Of a stretch of 64,000 bases of DNA, positions 2,200 to 60,446 are shown in pieces. Each line of letters starts with the position of its first letter. Positions within the stretch are counted from its first letter, which is position 1. The notes under the pieces are model-generated. The model did no database searches. It worked only from the letters and a program-made list of their open reading frames with translations, and was not told the DNA's origin. The DNA lies in the IMG/VR virus record IMGVR_UViG_3300005613_000001, positions 310,001 to 374,000 of that record; one strand, written 5' to 3'. Made by a program: the position numbers and the translations under genes.

Positions 2200-2283
2200 T
2201 GCCGAAGAGAGGACTCGAACCTCCACGCCCCGAAGGACATGAGTTCCTAAAACTCAGGCGTCTACCAATTCCGCCACTTCGGC
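2200..2283 (-). tRNA. trnL: tRNA-Leu(TAG), long variable arm
   Basis: GCCGAAG/CTTCGGC acceptor; TGAGT-TTTAGGA-ACTCA anticodon arm. Confidence 0.95.
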
Positions 2284-2799
2284 TTGTTTTTTCCGTCGTT
2301 CTCTTTGTTGCTTTGCAATCGTAGTTATCTCTGCCCAACCTTTTGATCCACACCACCCATCTGTTTGACTATGGCAATTGGGACAATTAAATTCTAAGTT
2401 TTCTTTTCTGTCATCAAGCCAATCTTTATTTTTGTGATCCACTTGGAGCATAATTGGTTTTCCATTCCATTCTCCCTCTAACCCACAAGTGCATTTGTAT
2501 TCTCTTCCTGATTCAATTAATGCTCTTCTTAATCGAAAAGAGTGTTGCCTTTTGCCGTGTGTCCTTTTAATCAATATTTCTTGCCATGTTTTCTTTTTTG
2601 GACCACCCCTATGATTTTTACCACAATTGGCCGCCCGCCCTAGAAAATGTGATGTATCTAAACCAAATTCTTTTATTTTACGTGAAATATGTGTGTGTGA
2701 CCCGCCTGCCTCTTTTAAACCCAACTTTCTTAGCACTTGAGCTATAGAAATAGATTCTTCAACTAATGGTTTTAGTAATGCTTTTGTGTATTTGCTCAT
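2254..2799 (-). CDS. HNH homing endonuclease; last 10 codons overlap tRNA-Leu(TAG)
   Basis: CTCG...LQVDHKN...ENLEFNCPNCHSQT HNH/zinc motifs. Confidence 0.85.
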   Translation of the reverse strand: MSKYTKALLKPLVEESISIAQVLRKLGLKEAGGSHTHISRKIKEFGLDTSHFLGRAANCGKNHRGGPKKKTWQEILIKRTHGKRQHSFRLRRALIESGREYKCTCGLEGEWNGKPIMLQVDHKNKDWLDDRKENLEFNCPNCHSQTDGWCGSKGWAEITTIAKQQRERRKKQAEVAELVDA

Positions 2800-9125: not shown

Positions 9126-9204
9126 TGGCACAAGAGGGATTCGAACCCTCATCCACATGTTTTTGAAACATGTCGCTCTGCCAGGGTGATTGGCGTATTG
9201 TGCC
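9126..9204 (-). tRNA. trnL: Atypical tRNA with CAA (Leu) anticodon, short variable loop and enlarged D loop
   Basis: GGCACAA/TTGTGCC-A acceptor; CATGT-TTCAAAA-ACATG; 5-nt variable loop TGGAT; GAGGG-TTCGAAT-CCCTC. Confidence 0.85.
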
Positions 9205-9208
9205 TCAG

Positions 9209-9285
9209 TGGCTCAGGTGGGATTCGAACCCACATCCACATAATTTTAAGTTATGTCGCTCTGCCGTTAGTTGGCGTACTGAGCC
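9209..9285 (-). tRNA. trnL: Atypical tRNA with TAA (Leu) anticodon and short variable loop
   Basis: GGCTCAG/CTGAGCC-A; CATAA-CTTAAAA-TTATG; variable loop TGGAT. Confidence 0.85.
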
Positions 9286-9289
9286 TTCA

Positions 9290-9496
9290 TCATCCAAATG
9301 CCTTTCTAGCATCTGTTTCGTTATTGAACAAACGACAACCCCAATAGGTTAAACTGTTTTCGTCAAACGATGAGTTGTTAGCTAATGCTATTTTACATGC
9401 TTCGTTAAAAGTGTCTGCTTCTTGAATGGCATACAAGAAAGCCGTACCACTCTGTCCCGTCGCCCTAAACCCTTCTACCCAAATTTCAAATTTCAT
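9290..9496 (-). CDS. Hypothetical protein
   Basis: ATG with GAGG SD. Confidence 0.65.
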   Translation of the reverse strand: MKFEIWVEGFRATGQSGTAFLYAIQEADTFNEACKIALANNSSFDENSLTYWGCRLFNNETDARKAFG

Positions 9497-9515
9497 TTTA
9501 ACCTCTTTTTTCAAG

Positions 9516-9594
9516 TAGCACGGGAGGGATTCGAACCCTCATCCACTAGTTTCTAAAACTAGTCGCTCTGCCAGGGTGATTGGCGTACCGTGCC
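9516..9594 (-). tRNA. trnL: Atypical tRNA with TAG (Leu) anticodon and short variable loop
   Basis: GGCACGG/CCGTGCT-A; CTAGT-TTTAGAA-ACTAG; D and T arms identical to the 9126 gene. Confidence 0.85.
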
Positions 9595-9598
9595 ATAT

Positions 9599-9796
9599 TT
9601 ACAAGTTGTCACTCAATGATTTTAAATCTTTTATAATTTGCTTATCAATAGGCTCTAAAAGTTTTGAACTAATATCCGCATGCTTAGCACATGATGCACA
9701 CAAATGCCGAAGACCATTCAAATACTGCCGCGTTGTTACCGCATCTTCATCGCAGGTCGCCCTTGGATTGCTACTATGCCAATGTTCGCATTTCAT
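9599..9796 (-). CDS. Small Cys/His hypothetical protein
   Basis: CEHWH...C...CASC. Confidence 0.5.
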   Translation of the reverse strand: MKCEHWHSSNPRATCDEDAVTTRQYLNGLRHLCASCAKHADISSKLLEPIDKQIIKDLKSLSDNL

Positions 9797-9814
9797 GATA
9801 AAATTAAGTTAATT

Positions 9815-10200
9815 GTGCGTGGTCCACACCCCTTTCAGGGTTCTGTTACTGCTTCGGGTAGTCAGTGGTTTATTTCTGACCTTGAAGCAACCTATCTTGT
9901 GTGGTAGGTCTGCGGGTATCAGTCATTTTTGTTCAACTTGTAAGAGTTACTTACAAGTTGGATTTGTTAGACATTCCCGCCCCCGCTTTATTACGTATGC
10001 GGTTGCCACCGTCCAATAGTTCTCCATCTATCGGACCCTTTCGCTGGTTAAGGCGATACCGACACAATCAACTTTGTTTGCAGCTTAGGATCAATACATG
10101 CACCCTGACCTTACGCCCGCAAGCGGCCAATTAATTTGACTTACCAGGCAGCACCTTGTTAGTTCCCCTAAGCCCCATCAAGGCTATTCGGTTGCAAACA
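9815..10200 (-). ncRNA. Putative large structured ncRNA (unclassified) within the tRNA array
   Basis: No credible ORF. Helices TGTTTGCA/TGCAAACA, GCTTAGG/CCTAAGC, an 11-bp CAACTTGTAAG hairpin, a CUUG tetraloop and a GAAA tetraloop. Confidence 0.55.
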
Positions 10201-10202
10201 AG

Positions 10203-10287
10203 CGGAAGGTGGGGGATTCGAACCCAACCAACCCATTTTCAGGGCGACCGGCTTCCAACCGGCTTCCTAACCATTCGGTTACCTTCC
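10203..10287 (-). tRNA. trnS: tRNA-Ser(GGA); T stem has two mismatches (possibly degenerate)
   Basis: GGAAGGT/ACCTTCC-G; loop TTGGAAG; long variable arm; T stem TTGGG/CCCCC. Confidence 0.75.
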
Positions 10288-10298
10288 AAATTATAAAG

Positions 10299-10386
10299 CG
10301 GAAGGAGCCGGAGTCGAACCGGCACGGGTCGTTAACCCCTAACAGTTTTCAAAACTGCGGCCACCACCACATTGGCTTGCCCTTCC
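10299..10386 (-). tRNA. trnS: tRNA-Ser(TGA)
   Basis: GCAGT-TTTGAAA-ACTGT; long variable arm; G73. Confidence 0.92.
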
Positions 10387-10393
10387 TAAAAAG

Positions 10394-10482
10394 CGGAAGC
10401 GACTGGAATCGAACCAGCACCGGGTTTGAAACCGGAATTGATTAGCAATCAACCGCAACGAGCCAATATTTGCCTCGCTTCC
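10394..10482 (-). tRNA. trnS: tRNA-Ser(GCT)
   Basis: GTTGA-TTGCTAA-TCAAT; long variable arm; G73. Confidence 0.92.
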
Positions 10483-10487
10483 GTAAG

Positions 10488-10569
10488 TGCGCCAGAGAGG
10501 AATCGAACCTCTACAGCCGAAGGCGTGTGATTTACAGTCACAGGGGCTCACCACCTGCCCAACTGACGC
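10488..10569 (-). tRNA. trnY: tRNA-Tyr(GTA)
   Basis: TGTGA-CTGTAAA-TCACA. Confidence 0.93.
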
Positions 10570-10584
10570 ATTTTTAACTCCTAG

Positions 10585-10670
10585 TGGGCCGGGAGGGATT
10601 CGAACCCCCATCGTTTACCCTGTGGGACGTGATTTACAGTCACGTAGCTTCACCATTTGCATACCGACCC
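10585..10670 (-). tRNA. trnY: tRNA-Tyr(GTA), second divergent copy
   Basis: CGTGA-CTGTAAA-TCACG. Confidence 0.93.
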
Positions 10671-10674
10671 TAAG

Positions 10675-10760
10675 CGGAAGCGGTGGGACTCGAACCCACA
10701 ACGGGCTTTCGCCGCGCACTTGTTTTCGAGACAAGCTCCTCATCCAGCCGGATCGCTTCC
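10675..10760 (-). tRNA. trnS: tRNA-Ser(CGA)
   Basis: CTTGT-CTCGAAA-ACAAG; long variable arm. Confidence 0.93.
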
Positions 10761-10778
10761 GTAGGCTTTACCAAATTG

Positions 10779-11015
10779 TCAAAGATCTCTCTGCCGCCTC
10801 TTTGAGACAGCCTTTTCTCTCAAGTACAATTCCAATTCTTTCGCATCTTCTGGGGTCATTGAAGCAATCTTATCTCCAAGAGCCCTAATCCAATCATCGG
10901 GATTTGTTGTGCCCACTTTCGGTGGTTTCCGAGGCGGCACCAAATCCGGGTTTGTTTTCAATTCTTCTGAAAACTCTTCCAAACCTTCAATGATTTTCTC
11001 TGCTATAGTTTTCAT
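10779..11015 (-). CDS. Hypothetical protein
   Basis: ATG 2 nt after the tRNA-Phe discriminator base. Confidence 0.6.
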   Translation of the reverse strand: MKTIAEKIIEGLEEFSEELKTNPDLVPPRKPPKVGTTNPDDWIRALGDKIASMTPEDAKELELYLREKAVSKRRQRDL

Positions 11016-11345: not shown

Positions 11346-11386
11346 AAAAAAAGCCTTTTTCCGGCGTTGCGCCGGAAAAAGGCTTT
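11346..11386 (-). terminator. Intrinsic terminator (attenuator 3:4 hairpin)
   Basis: 17-bp stem AAAGCCTTTTTCCGGCG/CGCCGGAAAAAGGCTTT with a 3-nt loop, ending in a run of 7 T. Confidence 0.9.
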
Positions 11387-58284: not shown

Positions 58285-59055
58285 ATGGCTTTAAAGAGAA
58301 CTACTGAAGAGGCAAGAAGGTATTTTAAAAAGTTAAAATACGAGCTATTAGATGAATACACTGGCTGCATGGTTAAGATGCGATATAAATGCACCAATTG
58401 TAACCACATCTCAGCGATTAGCTGGAATAATATATCCAGGGGCAAAAGATGCCCCTATTGTGGCAAAGGGCAAAGGAAGAAAAAATACACTCTTGAAGAA
58501 GTTCAAAAGATATTTAAAGACCGTGGGTGTGAGCTTTTAGAGCAAGAATATAAGAATAATGAAACACCCATGCAGTACAAATGCAAATGCGGTAGAACAG
58601 CTAAAATATCGTTGATTGGTTTCAAGCATCAAAACCAAGATTGTTATTATTGCGGATTGGAAAAAAATAAGAAAGAAAATCATCACGGTTGGATTGCTGA
58701 TCGGGAGCTTAAGAGGGAAAATGACCTTTTGCGTAAGAGATGTTATAAAGCCCTCTCCAGCACGCTAAAAGCATGCAACAGAGTAAAAGTTGGTCGTACT
58801 TCTGATATGTTGGGATACACTCCTGCCGAACTCCAAGAGCACGTTAAATCTCATCCTAACTGGGAAAATGTGAAGGATCAAGAATGGCACTTGGATCACA
58901 TTTTCCCCATTAATGCTTTCTTGAAACATGGTATAAAAGATGTTAAAATAATTAATAGGCTGGACAACCTTCAGCCCCTTCCTGGTAAAGAGAATATCAG
59001 TAAGAGTGACAATTATAATGAAGAGGAGTTTTTGGAGTGGTTAGAAAAACGATAG
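58285..59055 (+). CDS. Free-standing HNH homing endonuclease with Zn-ribbon repeats
   Basis: CTNC, CPYC, CKCG repeats; WHLDHIFP..NLQPL..ENISK. Confidence 0.8.
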   Translation: MALKRTTEEARRYFKKLKYELLDEYTGCMVKMRYKCTNCNHISAISWNNISRGKRCPYCGKGQRKKKYTLEEVQKIFKDRGCELLEQEYKNNETPMQYKCKCGRTAKISLIGFKHQNQDCYYCGLEKNKKENHHGWIADRELKRENDLLRKRCYKALSSTLKACNRVKVGRTSDMLGYTPAELQEHVKSHPNWENVKDQEWHLDHIFPINAFLKHGIKDVKIINRLDNLQPLPGKENISKSDNYNEEEFLEWLEKR

Positions 59056-60446
59056 CCGATTATCCTGAGCTAGTTTCCCAATGGCATCCTATTAAAAACG
59101 GTGATTTAAAGCCAGCAAACATAAGCCGCCGAAGCAGAAAAAAGATTTGGTGGAAATGTTATGATGGCGAATGGCCTGATGGGTCATTTGCAGATGATCA
59201 TGAGTGGAAAATAAGCGCAAATAATAAATCCTCTAAATGTCCTTTTTGTAGTCGCAAAAGGGTATGTCATTCCAATTCGCTGAAAGCCACTCATCCCGAA
59301 TTAATATTACAACTCCATCCTACCAAAAATGGTAACTTTGATGCTACAAGAGTGCTATCGGGCACAGCAATGAAAGTATGGTGGCAATGTGTTGATGGAC
59401 ACGAATGGCATGCATCCATTGCCAATCGAACTCATGCCACCAACCCACGCGGCTGTCCTCATTGCTATACTAAGACTTTTAAAAAACCCACCAAACAAGT
59501 TTTTTTAGAGTTTTATAGTACACATACTTTTGATGAGTGTTGCAAACACTTTAAAGTTAAGTCTGCCAGAATTTTTAATTGGCGAAAACAGTTTGGAATA
59601 GGAACAAAATTAGAGTTGAGAAATGAAAAATTATGTCTTACTTCCCGACAAATTCAAATTTTAGAAGGATCATTATTGGGAGATGGGAGTTTATCAGCAC
59701 CAAAGAAATTTTCCCACTTTAGAGAAATGCATTGTTGGAAACAGGCAGATTATGTTGATTTCAAGGGACAAGAATTAGGGGAGTTCACCAGCAATATCAG
59801 CACCACTTGGTCACATGGTAAGAAACGAAGGTCATTGGAATCAATAGGCCATCCTCAAATAACCGCATTGGAACAACAATGGTATAAGCGAGATAGTAAG
59901 GGAAATTACATTTTAAACCACAGAGGATATAGAACTAAAATAATACCCCCTCATTTGAAATTGACCCCCCTTACAATAGCCATTTGGTATTGTGATGATG
60001 GTTGGCATTCTCCCAAAGATAGAAGTGCTCATTTGTGTACCAATGGGTTTGCTTTTGATGAAACAGAATTTCTTGTAATAAAATTGAAAGAATTTGACAT
60101 ATCTTGTTGGGTACAATCCAGGTTTCAGCGTAAGACTCAAAAATTTGAACCACAAATATACATAGGACCACAATCTTATAAGAGCTTCATCCAAATGATT
60201 ACTCCGCATGTATCGGCCCCCTCAATGCAATATAAAGTAGATTTAAGTAATTATACGGAATCACAACACCAAGGCTACAAACCAAAGGGCTATTGGAGCG
60301 AACAGACTGTTCTAAAACACCTTATGTCGTATAAAGAGTTTCCAAGAAGAAGTCAATTAGACGGATCGTTATTGAATGCCATCAAACATTATGGAGGATT
60401 TAAATATTTTAGACATAAATTTGGAGTAATTAAAAGCGGAGGATAG
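59037..60446 (+). CDS. Free-standing LAGLIDADG endonuclease with treble-clef Zn-finger repeats
   Basis: PELVSQWHP.KN..WWKC..HEW..CPFC x2; GSLLGDGSL and LTPLTIAIWYCDDG. Confidence 0.85.
   Translation: MVRKTIADYPELVSQWHPIKNGDLKPANISRRSRKKIWWKCYDGEWPDGSFADDHEWKISANNKSSKCPFCSRKRVCHSNSLKATHPELILQLHPTKNGNFDATRVLSGTAMKVWWQCVDGHEWHASIANRTHATNPRGCPHCYTKTFKKPTKQVFLEFYSTHTFDECCKHFKVKSARIFNWRKQFGIGTKLELRNEKLCLTSRQIQILEGSLLGDGSLSAPKKFSHFREMHCWKQADYVDFKGQELGEFTSNISTTWSHGKKRRSLESIGHPQITALEQQWYKRDSKGNYILNHRGYRTKIIPPHLKLTPLTIAIWYCDDGWHSPKDRSAHLCTNGFAFDETEFLVIKLKEFDISCWVQSRFQRKTQKFEPQIYIGPQSYKSFIQMITPHVSAPSMQYKVDLSNYTESQHQGYKPKGYWSEQTVLKHLMSYKEFPRRSQLDGSLLNAIKHYGGFKYFRHKFGVIKSGG

What the first reader, a model, noticed from the sequence alone, without database searches (positions are those of the whole stretch)
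9815..10200. Candidate ~385-nt structured noncoding RNA embedded in the tRNA array
Seen, minus strand: it starts 2 nt after tRNA-Ser(GGA) and has no credible ORF. Helices include TGTTTGCA/TGCAAACA stacked on GCTTAGG/CCTAAGC, a potential CCTTG/CAAGG pseudoknot, CCG-CTTG-CGG, TATCG/CGATA, a perfect 11-bp CAACTTGTAAG hairpin, GACCTA/TAGGTT and CCCT-GAAA-GGGG. Established: GOLLD and ROOL RNAs occur beside phage tRNA clusters. The 5' UGUUUGCAA..AGCC start reminds me of ROOL termini (from memory, unverified), but this element is shorter, so it may be a new class.
Basis: partly seen in the sequence, partly recalled or inferred. Interest (0 to 1): 0.65.

Follow-up and report, generated by a model that had tools for sequence, protein, structure and literature searches.

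The report
Conserved small RNA among phage tRNAs
The first 126 bases of the flagged stretch are a conserved, pseudoknotted small RNA gene that sits like an extra tRNA inside the tRNA gene rows of some uncultured giant phages. It matches no described RNA family and its function is unknown. The other 260 bases have no match in anything that could be searched.

Summary
The window is part of a 527-kb uncultured giant phage with T4-like tail genes. The flagged 386-nt stretch (9815-10200, minus strand) has no ORF and no Rfam match, ROOL included.

Only its first 126 nt (10075-10200) are a real evolutionary unit. I found five diverged homologs (47-80% identical, 54 invariant columns) in other giant-phage contigs. 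All lie on the same strand as arrays of long-arm tRNAs (Leu/Ser/Tyr), and most are flush with tRNA genes on one or both sides.

Covariation supports the fold:
- On a structure-blind alignment, 95% of cells pair and 18 of 36 pairs show compensatory changes, with 0 of 500 shuffles matching.

The 3' 260 nt, including the 11-bp hairpin, have no relative in any collection or record searched. They fold equally well on both strands.

Most likely this is a stable small RNA cut out of the tRNA precursor by tRNA-processing enzymes. That resembles T4's orphan RNAC/RNAD in context, but I detected no homology to them. Its function is unknown. It is a new RNA family of a known kind, roughly a third of the proposed size.

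The parts
10202..10287 (-). Degenerate class-II tRNA-Ser(GGA) immediately upstream. Its 3' end lies about 2 nt (CU) before the motif.
   Evidence: ARAGORN calls it only at -ps80. Rfam gives a weak class-II tRNA-like hit of 23 bits. Read by eye, the T stem is poor.
10075..10200 (-). The conserved 126-nt pseudoknotted RNA motif, which is the real unit. RNA position n corresponds to window 10201-n.
   Evidence: Covariance models R1 and R2 hit it at 134 and 133 bits. Five diverged homologs score 83-156 bits. Covariation is shown. No Rfam hit.
10194..10200 (-). Helix A, 5' strand (RNA 1-7, UGUUUGC). It pairs with RNA 120-126 and seals the two ends of the RNA.
   Evidence: 6 of 7 pairs show compensatory changes in the CM alignment, for example UGUUUGC/GCAAACA against CAUCCGC/GCGGAUG against UGUCCAC/GUGGACA.
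10075..10081 (-). Helix A, 3' strand (RNA 120-126, GCAAACA).
10179..10183 (-). Pseudoknot, 5' strand (RNA 18-22, CCUUG), in the junction between helices A and B.
   Evidence: It pairs with RNA 43-47. In L158 the strands read UUGUG/CACAA, giving 3 compensatory pairs. The pseudoknot was not part of the covariance model, so this support is independent of the alignment method.
10154..10158 (-). Pseudoknot, 3' strand (RNA 43-47, CAAGG), inside helix B.
10167..10174 (-). Helix B, 5' strand (RNA 27-34, GGCUUAGG).
   Evidence: 8 bp. 5 pairs show compensatory changes, and 98% of cells pair even on the MAFFT-only alignment.
10082..10089 (-). Helix B, 3' strand (RNA 112-119, CCUAAGCU).
10143..10153 (-). 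Stem C0+C, 5' side (RNA 48-58, UGC-UG-CCUGGU).
   Evidence: 9 pairs, 100% paired, mostly invariant. One compensatory pair (U-A against C-G) and two one-sided changes.
10099..10109 (-). Stem C0+C, 3' side (RNA 92-102, GUCAGG-GU-GCA).
10127..10139 (-). Hairpin D (RNA 62-74), variable in sequence and length (13 nt here, about 36 nt in L156).
   Evidence: Every pair covaries: UCAA/UUGG, UCAG/CUGG, UAGC/GCUA, UAAC/GUUA, AAGC/GCUU.
10117..10126 (-). Hairpin E (RNA 75-84, CCG-CUUG-CGG), part of an almost invariant 20-nt block, CCGCUUGCGGGCGUAAGGUC.
   Evidence: The stem is invariant in all 6 sequences, and the loop reads CUCG in L158. Invariance neither supports nor opposes the pairing.
10090..10098 (-). 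Conserved unpaired 3' junction (RNA 103-111, UGUAUUGAU).
   Evidence: Alignments A7 and A8.
9815..10074 (-). 260-nt ORF-free tail (RNA 127-386) carrying the 11-bp and 9-bp hairpins. It is not part of the conserved RNA and its status is open.
   Evidence: No DNA or translated match in relatives, in the phage database or elsewhere in its own genome. The fold z is about -4 on both strands.
9599..9796 (-). Downstream 65-aa ORF with no Pfam family.
   Evidence: Called as a gene on the identical ENA contig.

Best explanation
Window 10075-10200 (minus strand) encodes a member of a previously undescribed family of small structured RNAs, 125-149 nt long, found in uncultured giant phages with T4-like tail genes.

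Shown:
- The gene occupies a tRNA-like slot in arrays of long-variable-arm tRNAs (Leu/Ser/Tyr), on the same strand, usually with 1-8 nt between it and a neighbouring tRNA gene.
- The RNA has a terminal helix A joining its 5' and 3' ends, stacked on an 8-bp helix B.
- A pseudoknot links the A/B junction to the interior.
- An inner stem C0/C carries two hairpins: D is variable and E is invariant.
- About 54 positions are invariant.

Inferred:
- It is transcribed as part of the polycistronic tRNA precursor.
- It is released by the enzymes that trim the flanking tRNAs: RNase P at the 5' end of the next tRNA, and RNase Z or 3' trimming at the previous tRNA.
- The product is a compact stable RNA with sealed ends. 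It acts in trans through its invariant core, binding a protein or RNA of the translation or tRNA machinery during infection.

The 260 nt that follow it in this phage are a lineage-specific spacer, leader or second element, not part of the RNA.
For: Homologs:
- Five diverged copies were found: L125 through a flanking-protein scan, and L132, L136, L156 and L158 through pattern scans.
- CM scores are 83-156 bits. Pairwise identity is 47-80%, with 54 invariant columns.
- The motif is far better conserved than its surroundings. L125 aligns at 82% over 109 nt by BLAST (76% over the full CM alignment), while the shared flanking protein is 41% identical. G020 and G021 carry it with tail sheath proteins only 57-64% identical.

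Structure:
- CM alignment: 99.1% of cells pair, and 19 of 36 pairs have compensatory changes.
- Structure-blind MAFFT alignment: 95.3% of cells pair, 18 of 36 pairs are compensatory, 0 of 500 shuffles match, and slid controls give about 40% paired with at most 6 compensatory pairs.
- The pseudoknot, which was not in the model, has 3 compensatory pairs.

Context:
- L156 and L158: tRNA-Leu(GAG) | motif | tRNA-Leu(UAG), with 1-8 nt spacers.
- L132: tRNA-Tyr | motif | class-II tRNA-like element.
- L136: motif | tRNA-Leu(CAG).
- Window: tRNA-Ser(GGA)-like | motif.
- There is one copy per genome.

Other points:
- All six frames carry stops across the motif.
- No Rfam family matches.
- A Logan sediment run holds a copy about 93% identical that covers only the tRNA end plus RNA nt 1-118; its flanks are unlike ours.
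Against: - There is no expression data. No RNA run holds this phage, so the transcript, its ends and its stability are all inferred.
- The family is small (6 distinct sequences plus one partial) and patchy. It is absent from the complete 532-kb relative G002 and from L121, which carries the same tRNA array.
- In the window and in L125 the motif is not followed by a tRNA, so 3'-end formation there needs another route. In L125 the terminal helix is followed by a U-run.
- RNA 1-126 alone folds no better than shuffles. Nested-fold programs cannot score the pseudoknot.
- Nothing computed here points to a particular binding partner. The EF-Tu genes found next to the motif in two relatives do not co-occur with it across genomes.
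Confidence: 0.6

Rival explanations
1. The whole 386 nt is one large structured RNA, a short ROOL- or GOLLD-like 'ornate' RNA. On this view the 126-nt motif is merely its best conserved domain.
For: - The whole stretch is ORF-free on the minus strand and folds better than shuffles, with z = -3.4.
- The tail has long perfect hairpins, and nt 127-386 give z of about -4.
- ROOL and GOLLD do sit near phage tRNA islands.
Against: - None of the five homologs has anything like the tail. Two have a tRNA within 3-8 nt after helix A, one has an ORF, and helix A closes the motif in all of them.
- The tail has no DNA or translated match in the four other motif-bearing IMG/VR records or in 19 further relatives.
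- The relative in run X1, about 93% identical, diverges after RNA nt 118.
- The tail folds equally well on both strands.
- No ROOL hit.
Confidence: 0.05
2. The motif is a cis-acting processing element, for example a new self-cleaving ribozyme. It would cut at its own boundary to mature the neighbouring tRNA, as HDV-like theta ribozymes do next to phage tRNAs.
For: - Its 5' end lies 1-2 nt after the discriminator base of the upstream tRNA in three loci, and 5 nt after it in L158, where CCA is encoded.
- It has a pseudoknotted core with many invariant unpaired nucleotides, as ribozymes do.
- Theta ribozymes set the precedent for ribozymes adjacent to phage tRNAs (PMC10879173).
Against: - No known ribozyme family in Rfam matches.
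- The topology differs from HDV-like folds. Here the 5'-terminal strand pairs with the 3'-terminal strand, whereas in HDV-like ribozymes the 5' strand forms an internal P1 (structure; the HDV fold is from established knowledge).
- In L125 and L136 no tRNA precedes the motif.
- At 126-149 nt it is large for a small self-cleaver.
Confidence: 0.12
3. The motif is a very distant homolog of phage T4 RNAD (species 2 RNA). It would then be an already known, though functionally orphan, RNA family.
For: - The genomic logic is the same. T4 has tRNA-Arg, 1 nt, rnaD (119 nt), 6 nt, rnaC (139 nt).
- Size is similar, and the giant phage has T4-type sheath and baseplate genes.
- T4 rnaD shares short collinear words with the motif: CCGGUAAGUC, GAGUAAGG and UUUAUUGAUGCC.
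Against: - Model R1 with filters off and model R2 find nothing at rnaC or rnaD.
- An nhmmer profile of the six motifs finds nothing in the 8-kb T4 locus even at E<=100.
- Threading T4 rnaD by eye onto helices C, D and E fails, because GAGUAAGG sits in a hairpin loop there (my reading).
Confidence: 0.07
4. The motif is a non-functional or merely structural spacer: a decayed class-II tRNA gene or a remnant of a mobile element carried along within the tRNA arrays.
For: - It occupies tRNA slots in the arrays.
- These arrays contain degenerate tRNAs (window 10202-10287; L125 around 365-508) and homing-endonuclease genes.
- Its distribution is patchy.
Against: - 54 invariant columns and 18-19 compensatory pairs across phages whose sheath proteins are only 57-64% identical indicate purifying selection on a fold.
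- The tRNA model does not hit it at E<=10.
- It has no T arm or anticodon arm.
Confidence: 0.06
5. The motif is a 5' leader or riboswitch controlling the downstream ORF (the 65-aa ORF here, a 92-aa ORF in L125).
For: - In the window and in L125 an ORF follows on the same strand.
- In L125 the terminal helix is followed by a U-run, which looks like a terminator.
Against: - In at least three of the six loci the next gene is a tRNA, and in L132 a class-II tRNA-like element follows.
- The two downstream ORFs are unrelated.
- In the window, 260 nt separate the motif from the ORF.
Confidence: 0.04

Closest known systems
Phage T4 RNAC (species 1) and RNAD (species 2), small stable RNAs of the T4 tRNA gene cluster
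   Same: - Small RNAs (119 and 139 nt, against 125-149 nt here) encoded on the tRNA strand.
- They directly abut a tRNA gene in a phage tRNA cluster.
- Function is still unknown (PMC3014915, PMC9697503).
- Neither is in Rfam.
- The host phage has T4-type tail genes.
   Different: - No homology is detectable by covariance model or profile HMM.
- T4 RNAC ends in a tRNA-like T arm, which the motif lacks.
- The motif has an A/B/pseudoknot architecture that I could not thread onto RNAD.
- The motif sits among Leu/Ser/Tyr tRNAs, not after tRNA-Arg.
ROOL (RF03087) and GOLLD large ornate RNAs
   Same: Phage-encoded structured RNAs of unknown function, with pseudoknots, often near tRNA islands.
   Different: - They are 4-7 times larger: the ROOL model has 574 positions, and GOLLD often exceeds 800 nt.
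- There is no CM hit to the candidate or to the whole genome.
- They form multimeric nanocages. Nothing comparable was tested or suggested here.
HDV-like theta ribozymes next to phage tRNAs (PMC10879173)
   Same: Compact pseudoknotted RNAs placed directly next to tRNA genes in phage genomes. They are proposed to take part in tRNA 3'-end maturation.
   Different: - No Rfam HDV-type hit.
- The topology differs: here the terminal strands pair with each other.
- By established knowledge of minimal HDV-like ribozymes, the motif is about twice their size.
- Catalysis was not tested.
tRNA and tmRNA genes of phage tRNA arrays
   Same: - Same slot, strand and spacing as a tRNA gene.
- Ends paired in a 7-11 bp helix, like an acceptor stem.
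   Different: - No tRNA or tmRNA model hit at the motif at E<=10.
- Default ARAGORN finds nothing there. At -ps80 it proposes permuted-tmRNA artefacts across the whole array.
- No T arm, anticodon arm, CCA or tag reading frame.

Membership tests
ROOL (Rfam RF03087) | Match to the ROOL covariance model (574 positions, gathering score 99.1 bits) | tested here: not met
   No hit at E<=10 on 9400-10700, and none in the whole 527-kb genome at E<=1. The control genomes were also silent, so only the cmscan result is informative.
ROOL (Rfam RF03087) | Length of about 500-600 nt with multiple conserved pseudoknotted domains | tested here: not met
   The conserved unit is 126 nt (125-149 nt in relatives), closed by helix A.
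GOLLD | Match to the Rfam GOLLD model; more than 800 nt with a conserved 3' half | tested here: not met
   The all-family cmscan of Rfam 15 gave no such hit. I did not run the family singly because the accession I recalled was wrong.
T4 RNAC/RNAD small stable RNAs | Encoded in a phage tRNA cluster, on the tRNA strand, abutting a tRNA gene | tested here: met
   T4 annotation. Motif context in six loci.
T4 RNAC/RNAD small stable RNAs | Sequence and structure homology to T4 rnaC or rnaD | tested here: not met
   R1 with filters off, R2, and an nhmmer profile of A7 give no hit on the T4 locus. The reverse test, an rnaD model against the motifs, was not run.
T4 RNAC/RNAD small stable RNAs | Accumulates as a discrete stable RNA during infection | not testable with these tools
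   No RNA run holds this phage.
HDV-like theta ribozymes | Cleavage-site end directly adjacent to a tRNA | tested here: inconclusive
   The 5' end of the motif is 1-5 nt from a tRNA 3' end in four of six loci, and is not next to a tRNA in L125 or L136.
HDV-like theta ribozymes | Nested double-pseudoknot HDV fold (the 5' strand forms P1 with an internal strand); match to HDV-type models | tested here: not met
   No Rfam HDV-type hit. The covariation-supported topology pairs the 5' end with the 3' end.
HDV-like theta ribozymes | Self-scission in vitro | not testable with these tools
   This needs a bench assay.
tRNA (RF00005) / tmRNA (RF00023) | Cloverleaf with T arm and anticodon arm, or a tRNA-like domain plus tag ORF | tested here: not met
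   No tRNA or tmRNA hit over 10075-10200 at E<=10. Default ARAGORN finds none. The relaxed-threshold 'tmRNAp*' calls also appear elsewhere in the array and carry atypical tags.
New family proposed here (class-II tRNA-array motif) | Helices A, B, C0/C, D and E plus the pseudoknot; an invariant core (ACAAGGUGCUGC ... CGAUAAG ... CCGCUUGCGGGCGUAAGGUC ... UGCA ... UUGAUC) | tested here: met
   The window copy scores 132.7 bits against R2 over all 126 positions. It was one of the sequences the model was built from, so it matches partly by construction. L158, which was not used to build R2, scores 82.8 bits.

The most novel reading that the evidence does not exclude
The 126-nt motif may be a new functional class of phage RNA that works on the tRNA or translation machinery. 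It could be a new self-cleaving or processing ribozyme that punctuates tRNA arrays. It could instead be a decoy or regulator that binds a host or phage factor acting on long-arm tRNAs, such as a tRNA-directed defence nuclease, a synthetase or a processing enzyme. Either way it would be the first tractable handle on the question left open by T4's RNAC and RNAD: why do phages embed non-tRNA small RNAs in their tRNA clusters?
Probability: 0.15. Interest if true: 0.85.

Novelty: new variant of a known kind. Interest (0 to 1): 0.6.

Why it matters
Phage tRNA clusters have long been known to hide non-tRNA RNAs: RNAC and RNAD in T4, and ROOL and GOLLD near tRNA islands. None of these has an established function.

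This is a further, compact family. It has a well-defined pseudoknotted fold and an unusually invariant core, and it sits in a precise tRNA-like slot. At about 130 nt it is small enough for quick biochemistry, including processing assays, probing, pull-downs and structure determination.

It also corrects the annotation. The feature is a 126-nt gene, not a 385-nt one, and simple fold-energy scans would have pointed to the wrong two-thirds of the region.

Tried and rejected
**Known RNA families**
- Rfam 15 at gathering scores and at E<=10, on the window copy and on the L132 copy: only tRNAs.
- RNase P, SRP, cobalamin riboswitch and 5S resemblances that I noticed by eye: none is backed by any CM hit, so I dropped them.
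- tmRNA: default ARAGORN finds none in the 527-kb genome. The relaxed 'permuted tmRNA' calls are artefacts.

**Homolog searches**
- BLAST against GenBank phages with the 386-nt and the 126-nt query: nothing, apart from one chance 40-nt hit.
- BLAST and nhmmer of the 386 nt against 19 related IMG/VR records and the complete relative G002: nothing.
- Protein-anchored searches: the 351-aa neighbour has no relatives in IMG/VR, and the 168-aa neighbour has few.
- Exact-protein look-ups returned only 100% identical copies of the same phage, from ENA ERZ27256772 and JGI 3300005346. The metagenome scan added a further 100% identical copy of the RNA, JGI10211J34971.
- The genome contigs pattern scan gave 16 hits. 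All were chance matches, with no R2 hit.
- R1 and R2 on 77 further sheath-related IMG/VR records: no extra member, though most are short fragments.
- The metagenome record behind L092 could not be searched because it is not held.

**Other lines**
- Paralogs in the phage's own genome: none.
- Coding remnants in the tail by tblastx: none.
- Expression: no RNA run was found. The one run laid, X1, consists of DNA contigs (5,001 letters, within the operators' limit).
- EF-Tu as a partner: rejected because it does not co-occur with the motif.
- Conserved neighbouring protein across the six loci: none.

No alternative genetic code was used.

Full report
**Setting**

The window is bases 310001-374000 of a 527,112-bp IMG/VR virus record rated 100% complete. 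The phage carries T4-type sheath and baseplate genes, a B12-dependent ribonucleotide reductase, SbcC-like genes and others. It has at least 59 tRNA genes. Its tail sheath is under 40% identical to that of any GenBank phage, but 57-68% identical to sheaths on many large metagenomic contigs of up to 664 kb. It therefore belongs to an uncultured clade of giant phages.

The candidate lies on the minus strand at the end of a run of long-variable-arm tRNAs. The order is Phe, Phe, a 78-aa ORF, Ser(CGA), Tyr, Tyr, Ser(GCU), Ser(UGA), a degenerate Ser(GGA), then the candidate, then a 65-aa ORF.

**Checking the observation**

- The stretch 9815-10200 carries only short, mostly antisense ORFs that look non-coding, and all six frames carry stops across the first 126 nt.
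- It starts about 2 nt after the Ser(GGA)-like tRNA.
- It is richer in G+C than the coding background.
- As a whole it folds better than dinucleotide shuffles, with z = -3.4.

Split into parts, the energy signal comes entirely from RNA nt 127-386. There z is about -4 on both strands, driven by the perfect 11-bp and 9-bp hairpins. Nt 1-126 give z = 0.08. No Rfam 15 family matches at gathering scores or at E<=10. The ROOL model is silent over the whole genome.

**Finding relatives**

Direct searches failed at first. The GenBank phage collection, 19 related IMG/VR records and the complete 532-kb relative G002 gave nothing. Exact-protein look-ups returned only identical copies of the same phage.

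Three leads then opened the family:
- A Logan sediment run holds a contig about 93% identical. It aligns only to window 10083-10225, that is the end of the tRNA plus RNA nt 1-118, and its flanks are unlike ours.
- A scan of JGI metagenomes, anchored on a conserved peptide of the 168-aa protein 2.4 kb downstream, returned contig SDBT01067361.1 (L125). There the protein is only 41% identical, yet RNA nt 20-127 align at 82%.
- The blocks shared by those two copies gave exact patterns. Scans of IMG/VR with these patterns found four more copies: L132 (a 254-kb record), L136, L156 and L158. The other pattern hits, including all 16 in prokaryotic genomes, were chance matches with no covariance-model hit.

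**The real unit**

All six sequences align over 125-149 nt, corresponding to window 10075-10200. Pairwise identity is 47-80%, and 54 columns are invariant. The fold has these elements:
- Helix A: 7-11 bp, joining the 5' and 3' ends.
- Junction: conserved, AAC-N-GAAUAG-CCUUG-AU.
- Helix B: 8 bp.
- Pseudoknot: the CCUUG of the junction pairs with a CAAGG inside helix B.
- Stem C0/C: inner stem.
- Hairpin D: variable, 13 to about 36 nt.
- Hairpin E: invariant, CCG-CUUG-CGG, inside a nearly invariant 20-nt block.
- 3' junction: conserved, ending in UUGAUC.

Covariation counts are as follows.

| Alignment | Cells paired | Pairs with compensatory changes | Shuffles matching | Slid controls |
|---|---|---|---|---|
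| Fitted to the covariance model | 99.1% | 19 of 36 | 0 of 500 | 37-44% paired, at most 5 compensatory pairs |
| Structure-blind MAFFT | 95.3% | 18 of 36 | 0 of 500 | 37-42% paired, at most 6 compensatory pairs |

The pseudoknot was not part of the model. In L158 it changes from CCUUG/CAAGG to UUGUG/CACAA, which is three compensatory pairs.

**The tail**

None of the five homologs has anything similar. In L156 and L158 a tRNA gene starts 3-8 nt after helix A, and in L136 about 6 nt after. In L132 a class-II tRNA-like element follows, and in L125 an unrelated 92-aa ORF.

The tail has no DNA match in the other motif-bearing IMG/VR records. It has no paralog in its own genome and no translated similarity to anything at hand. 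It may be a leader of the 65-aa ORF, a second lineage-specific RNA, or a spacer. I cannot tell which. It is not part of the conserved RNA.

**Context and likely mechanism**

The motif occurs once per record, always on the tRNA strand inside Leu/Ser/Tyr tRNA arrays:
- L156 and L158: Leu(GAG) | motif | Leu(UAG).
- L132: Tyr | motif | class-II tRNA-like element.
- L136: motif | Leu(CAG).
- Window: Ser(GGA)-like | motif.

Spacers are 1-2 nt after the discriminator base of the upstream tRNA (5 nt in L158, where CCA is encoded). They are 3-8 nt before the downstream tRNA.

A gene in that position is necessarily part of the tRNA precursor, and trimming of its neighbours should release it. I therefore infer, but have not shown, a stable RNA of about 130 nt with ends sealed by helix A. 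Its invariant core would be a specific binding or catalytic surface.

No RNA data exist to test this. No protein gene is consistently adjacent. EF-Tu genes lie next to the motif in L136 and L156. However, G002 has EF-Tu and no motif, and our phage has the motif and no EF-Tu.

The distribution is patchy. The motif is absent from the complete relative G002 and from L121, which shares the array. That pattern fits an accessory function, or gain and loss as the arrays are shuffled.

**Comparison with what is known**

- **T4 RNAC and RNAD** are the closest in kind. They are 139 and 119 nt, follow tRNA-Arg directly in the T4 tRNA cluster, are expressed, and are still of unknown function (PMC3014915, PMC9697503). 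They are not in Rfam. T4 RNAD shares three short collinear words with the motif. However, neither covariance model nor a profile HMM detects any relation, so I do not file the motif as a member.
- **ROOL and GOLLD** share the tRNA-island context. They are several times larger and unrelated by model search.
- **HDV-like theta ribozymes** share the position next to phage tRNAs (PMC10879173). They have a different topology.

**Verdict**

The finding is real but needs redrawing. It is a new family of small structured RNA, 126 nt in this phage, within the known phenomenon of non-tRNA RNAs embedded in phage tRNA clusters. It is not a 385-nt ROOL-like RNA.

My confidence levels are:
- About 0.95 that the 126-nt unit is a conserved structured RNA.
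- About 0.6 that it is released by tRNA processing.
- About 0.4 that it acts in trans.

What it actually does is unknown.

Noticed in passing
L136:3446-4501 (-); L156:13117-14295 (+); G002:C1:489880-491049 (-): Full-length EF-Tu homologs (GTP_EFTU plus domains 2 and 3) are encoded inside the class-II tRNA arrays of related giant phages. In L136 the gene lies 89 nt upstream of the motif. Our phage has none, and EF-Tu does not co-occur with the motif.
   Followed up: partly
window 10678-10765 (-), 10202-10287 (-), 9516-9594 (-), 9126-9204 (-), 9209-9285 (-): Default ARAGORN misses five tRNA or tRNA-like genes of the array. They are Ser(CGA), a degenerate Ser(GGA) with a poor T stem, a Leu(UAG)-like tRNA, and two more Rfam tRNA hits.
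   Followed up: partly
G000 genome 167265-167425 (outside the window): The phage carries adjacent suppressor-type tRNAs with anticodons CUA and UUA. The window's genes, including the 823-aa sheath, read through in table 11, so I saw no sign of recoding here and did not pursue it.
   Followed up: no
L157 (T4 AF158101 71053-71171, rnaD): T4 RNAD contains CCGGUAAGUC, GAGUAAGG and UUUAUUGAUGCC in the same order as the motif's CC(U)GGUAAGUC, GCGUAAGG and GUAUUGAUCC. No covariance model or profile HMM supports homology. This could be chance or a shared short tertiary motif.
   Followed up: partly
G002:C1:491736-491903: In the motif-less complete relative, the slot directly after tRNA-Leu(GAG) holds a 91-nt class-II-like tRNA with anticodon CUA. 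L156 and L158 carry the motif in that slot.
   Followed up: no
L125:160-510 and L121:4824-5200: Two relatives share a small Arg/Lys-rich ORF (65-79 aa) followed by a degenerate tRNA-like element, inside their Phe/Ser tRNA arrays.
   Followed up: no
window 2254-2799 (-), 59037-60446 (+): An HNH-like ORF, with relatives next to the arrays in L132 and L136, and a LAGLIDADG/treble-clef homing endonuclease. The HNH-like ORFs show mobile endonuclease genes sitting in and around the tRNA arrays, which may explain the shuffled array order.
   Followed up: no
window 11350-11386 (-): A strong intrinsic-terminator-like hairpin (17 bp followed by a T-run) lies just upstream of the Phe-Phe start of the array. 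It marks the end of the preceding transcription unit.
   Followed up: no
window 10673-10839: In the sediment run X1 this bin, which includes tRNA-Ser(CGA), reaches a contig depth above 100, against about 5 elsewhere. Abundant community members evidently carry a tRNA at least 80% similar. This might hint at the host but was not pursued.
   Followed up: no
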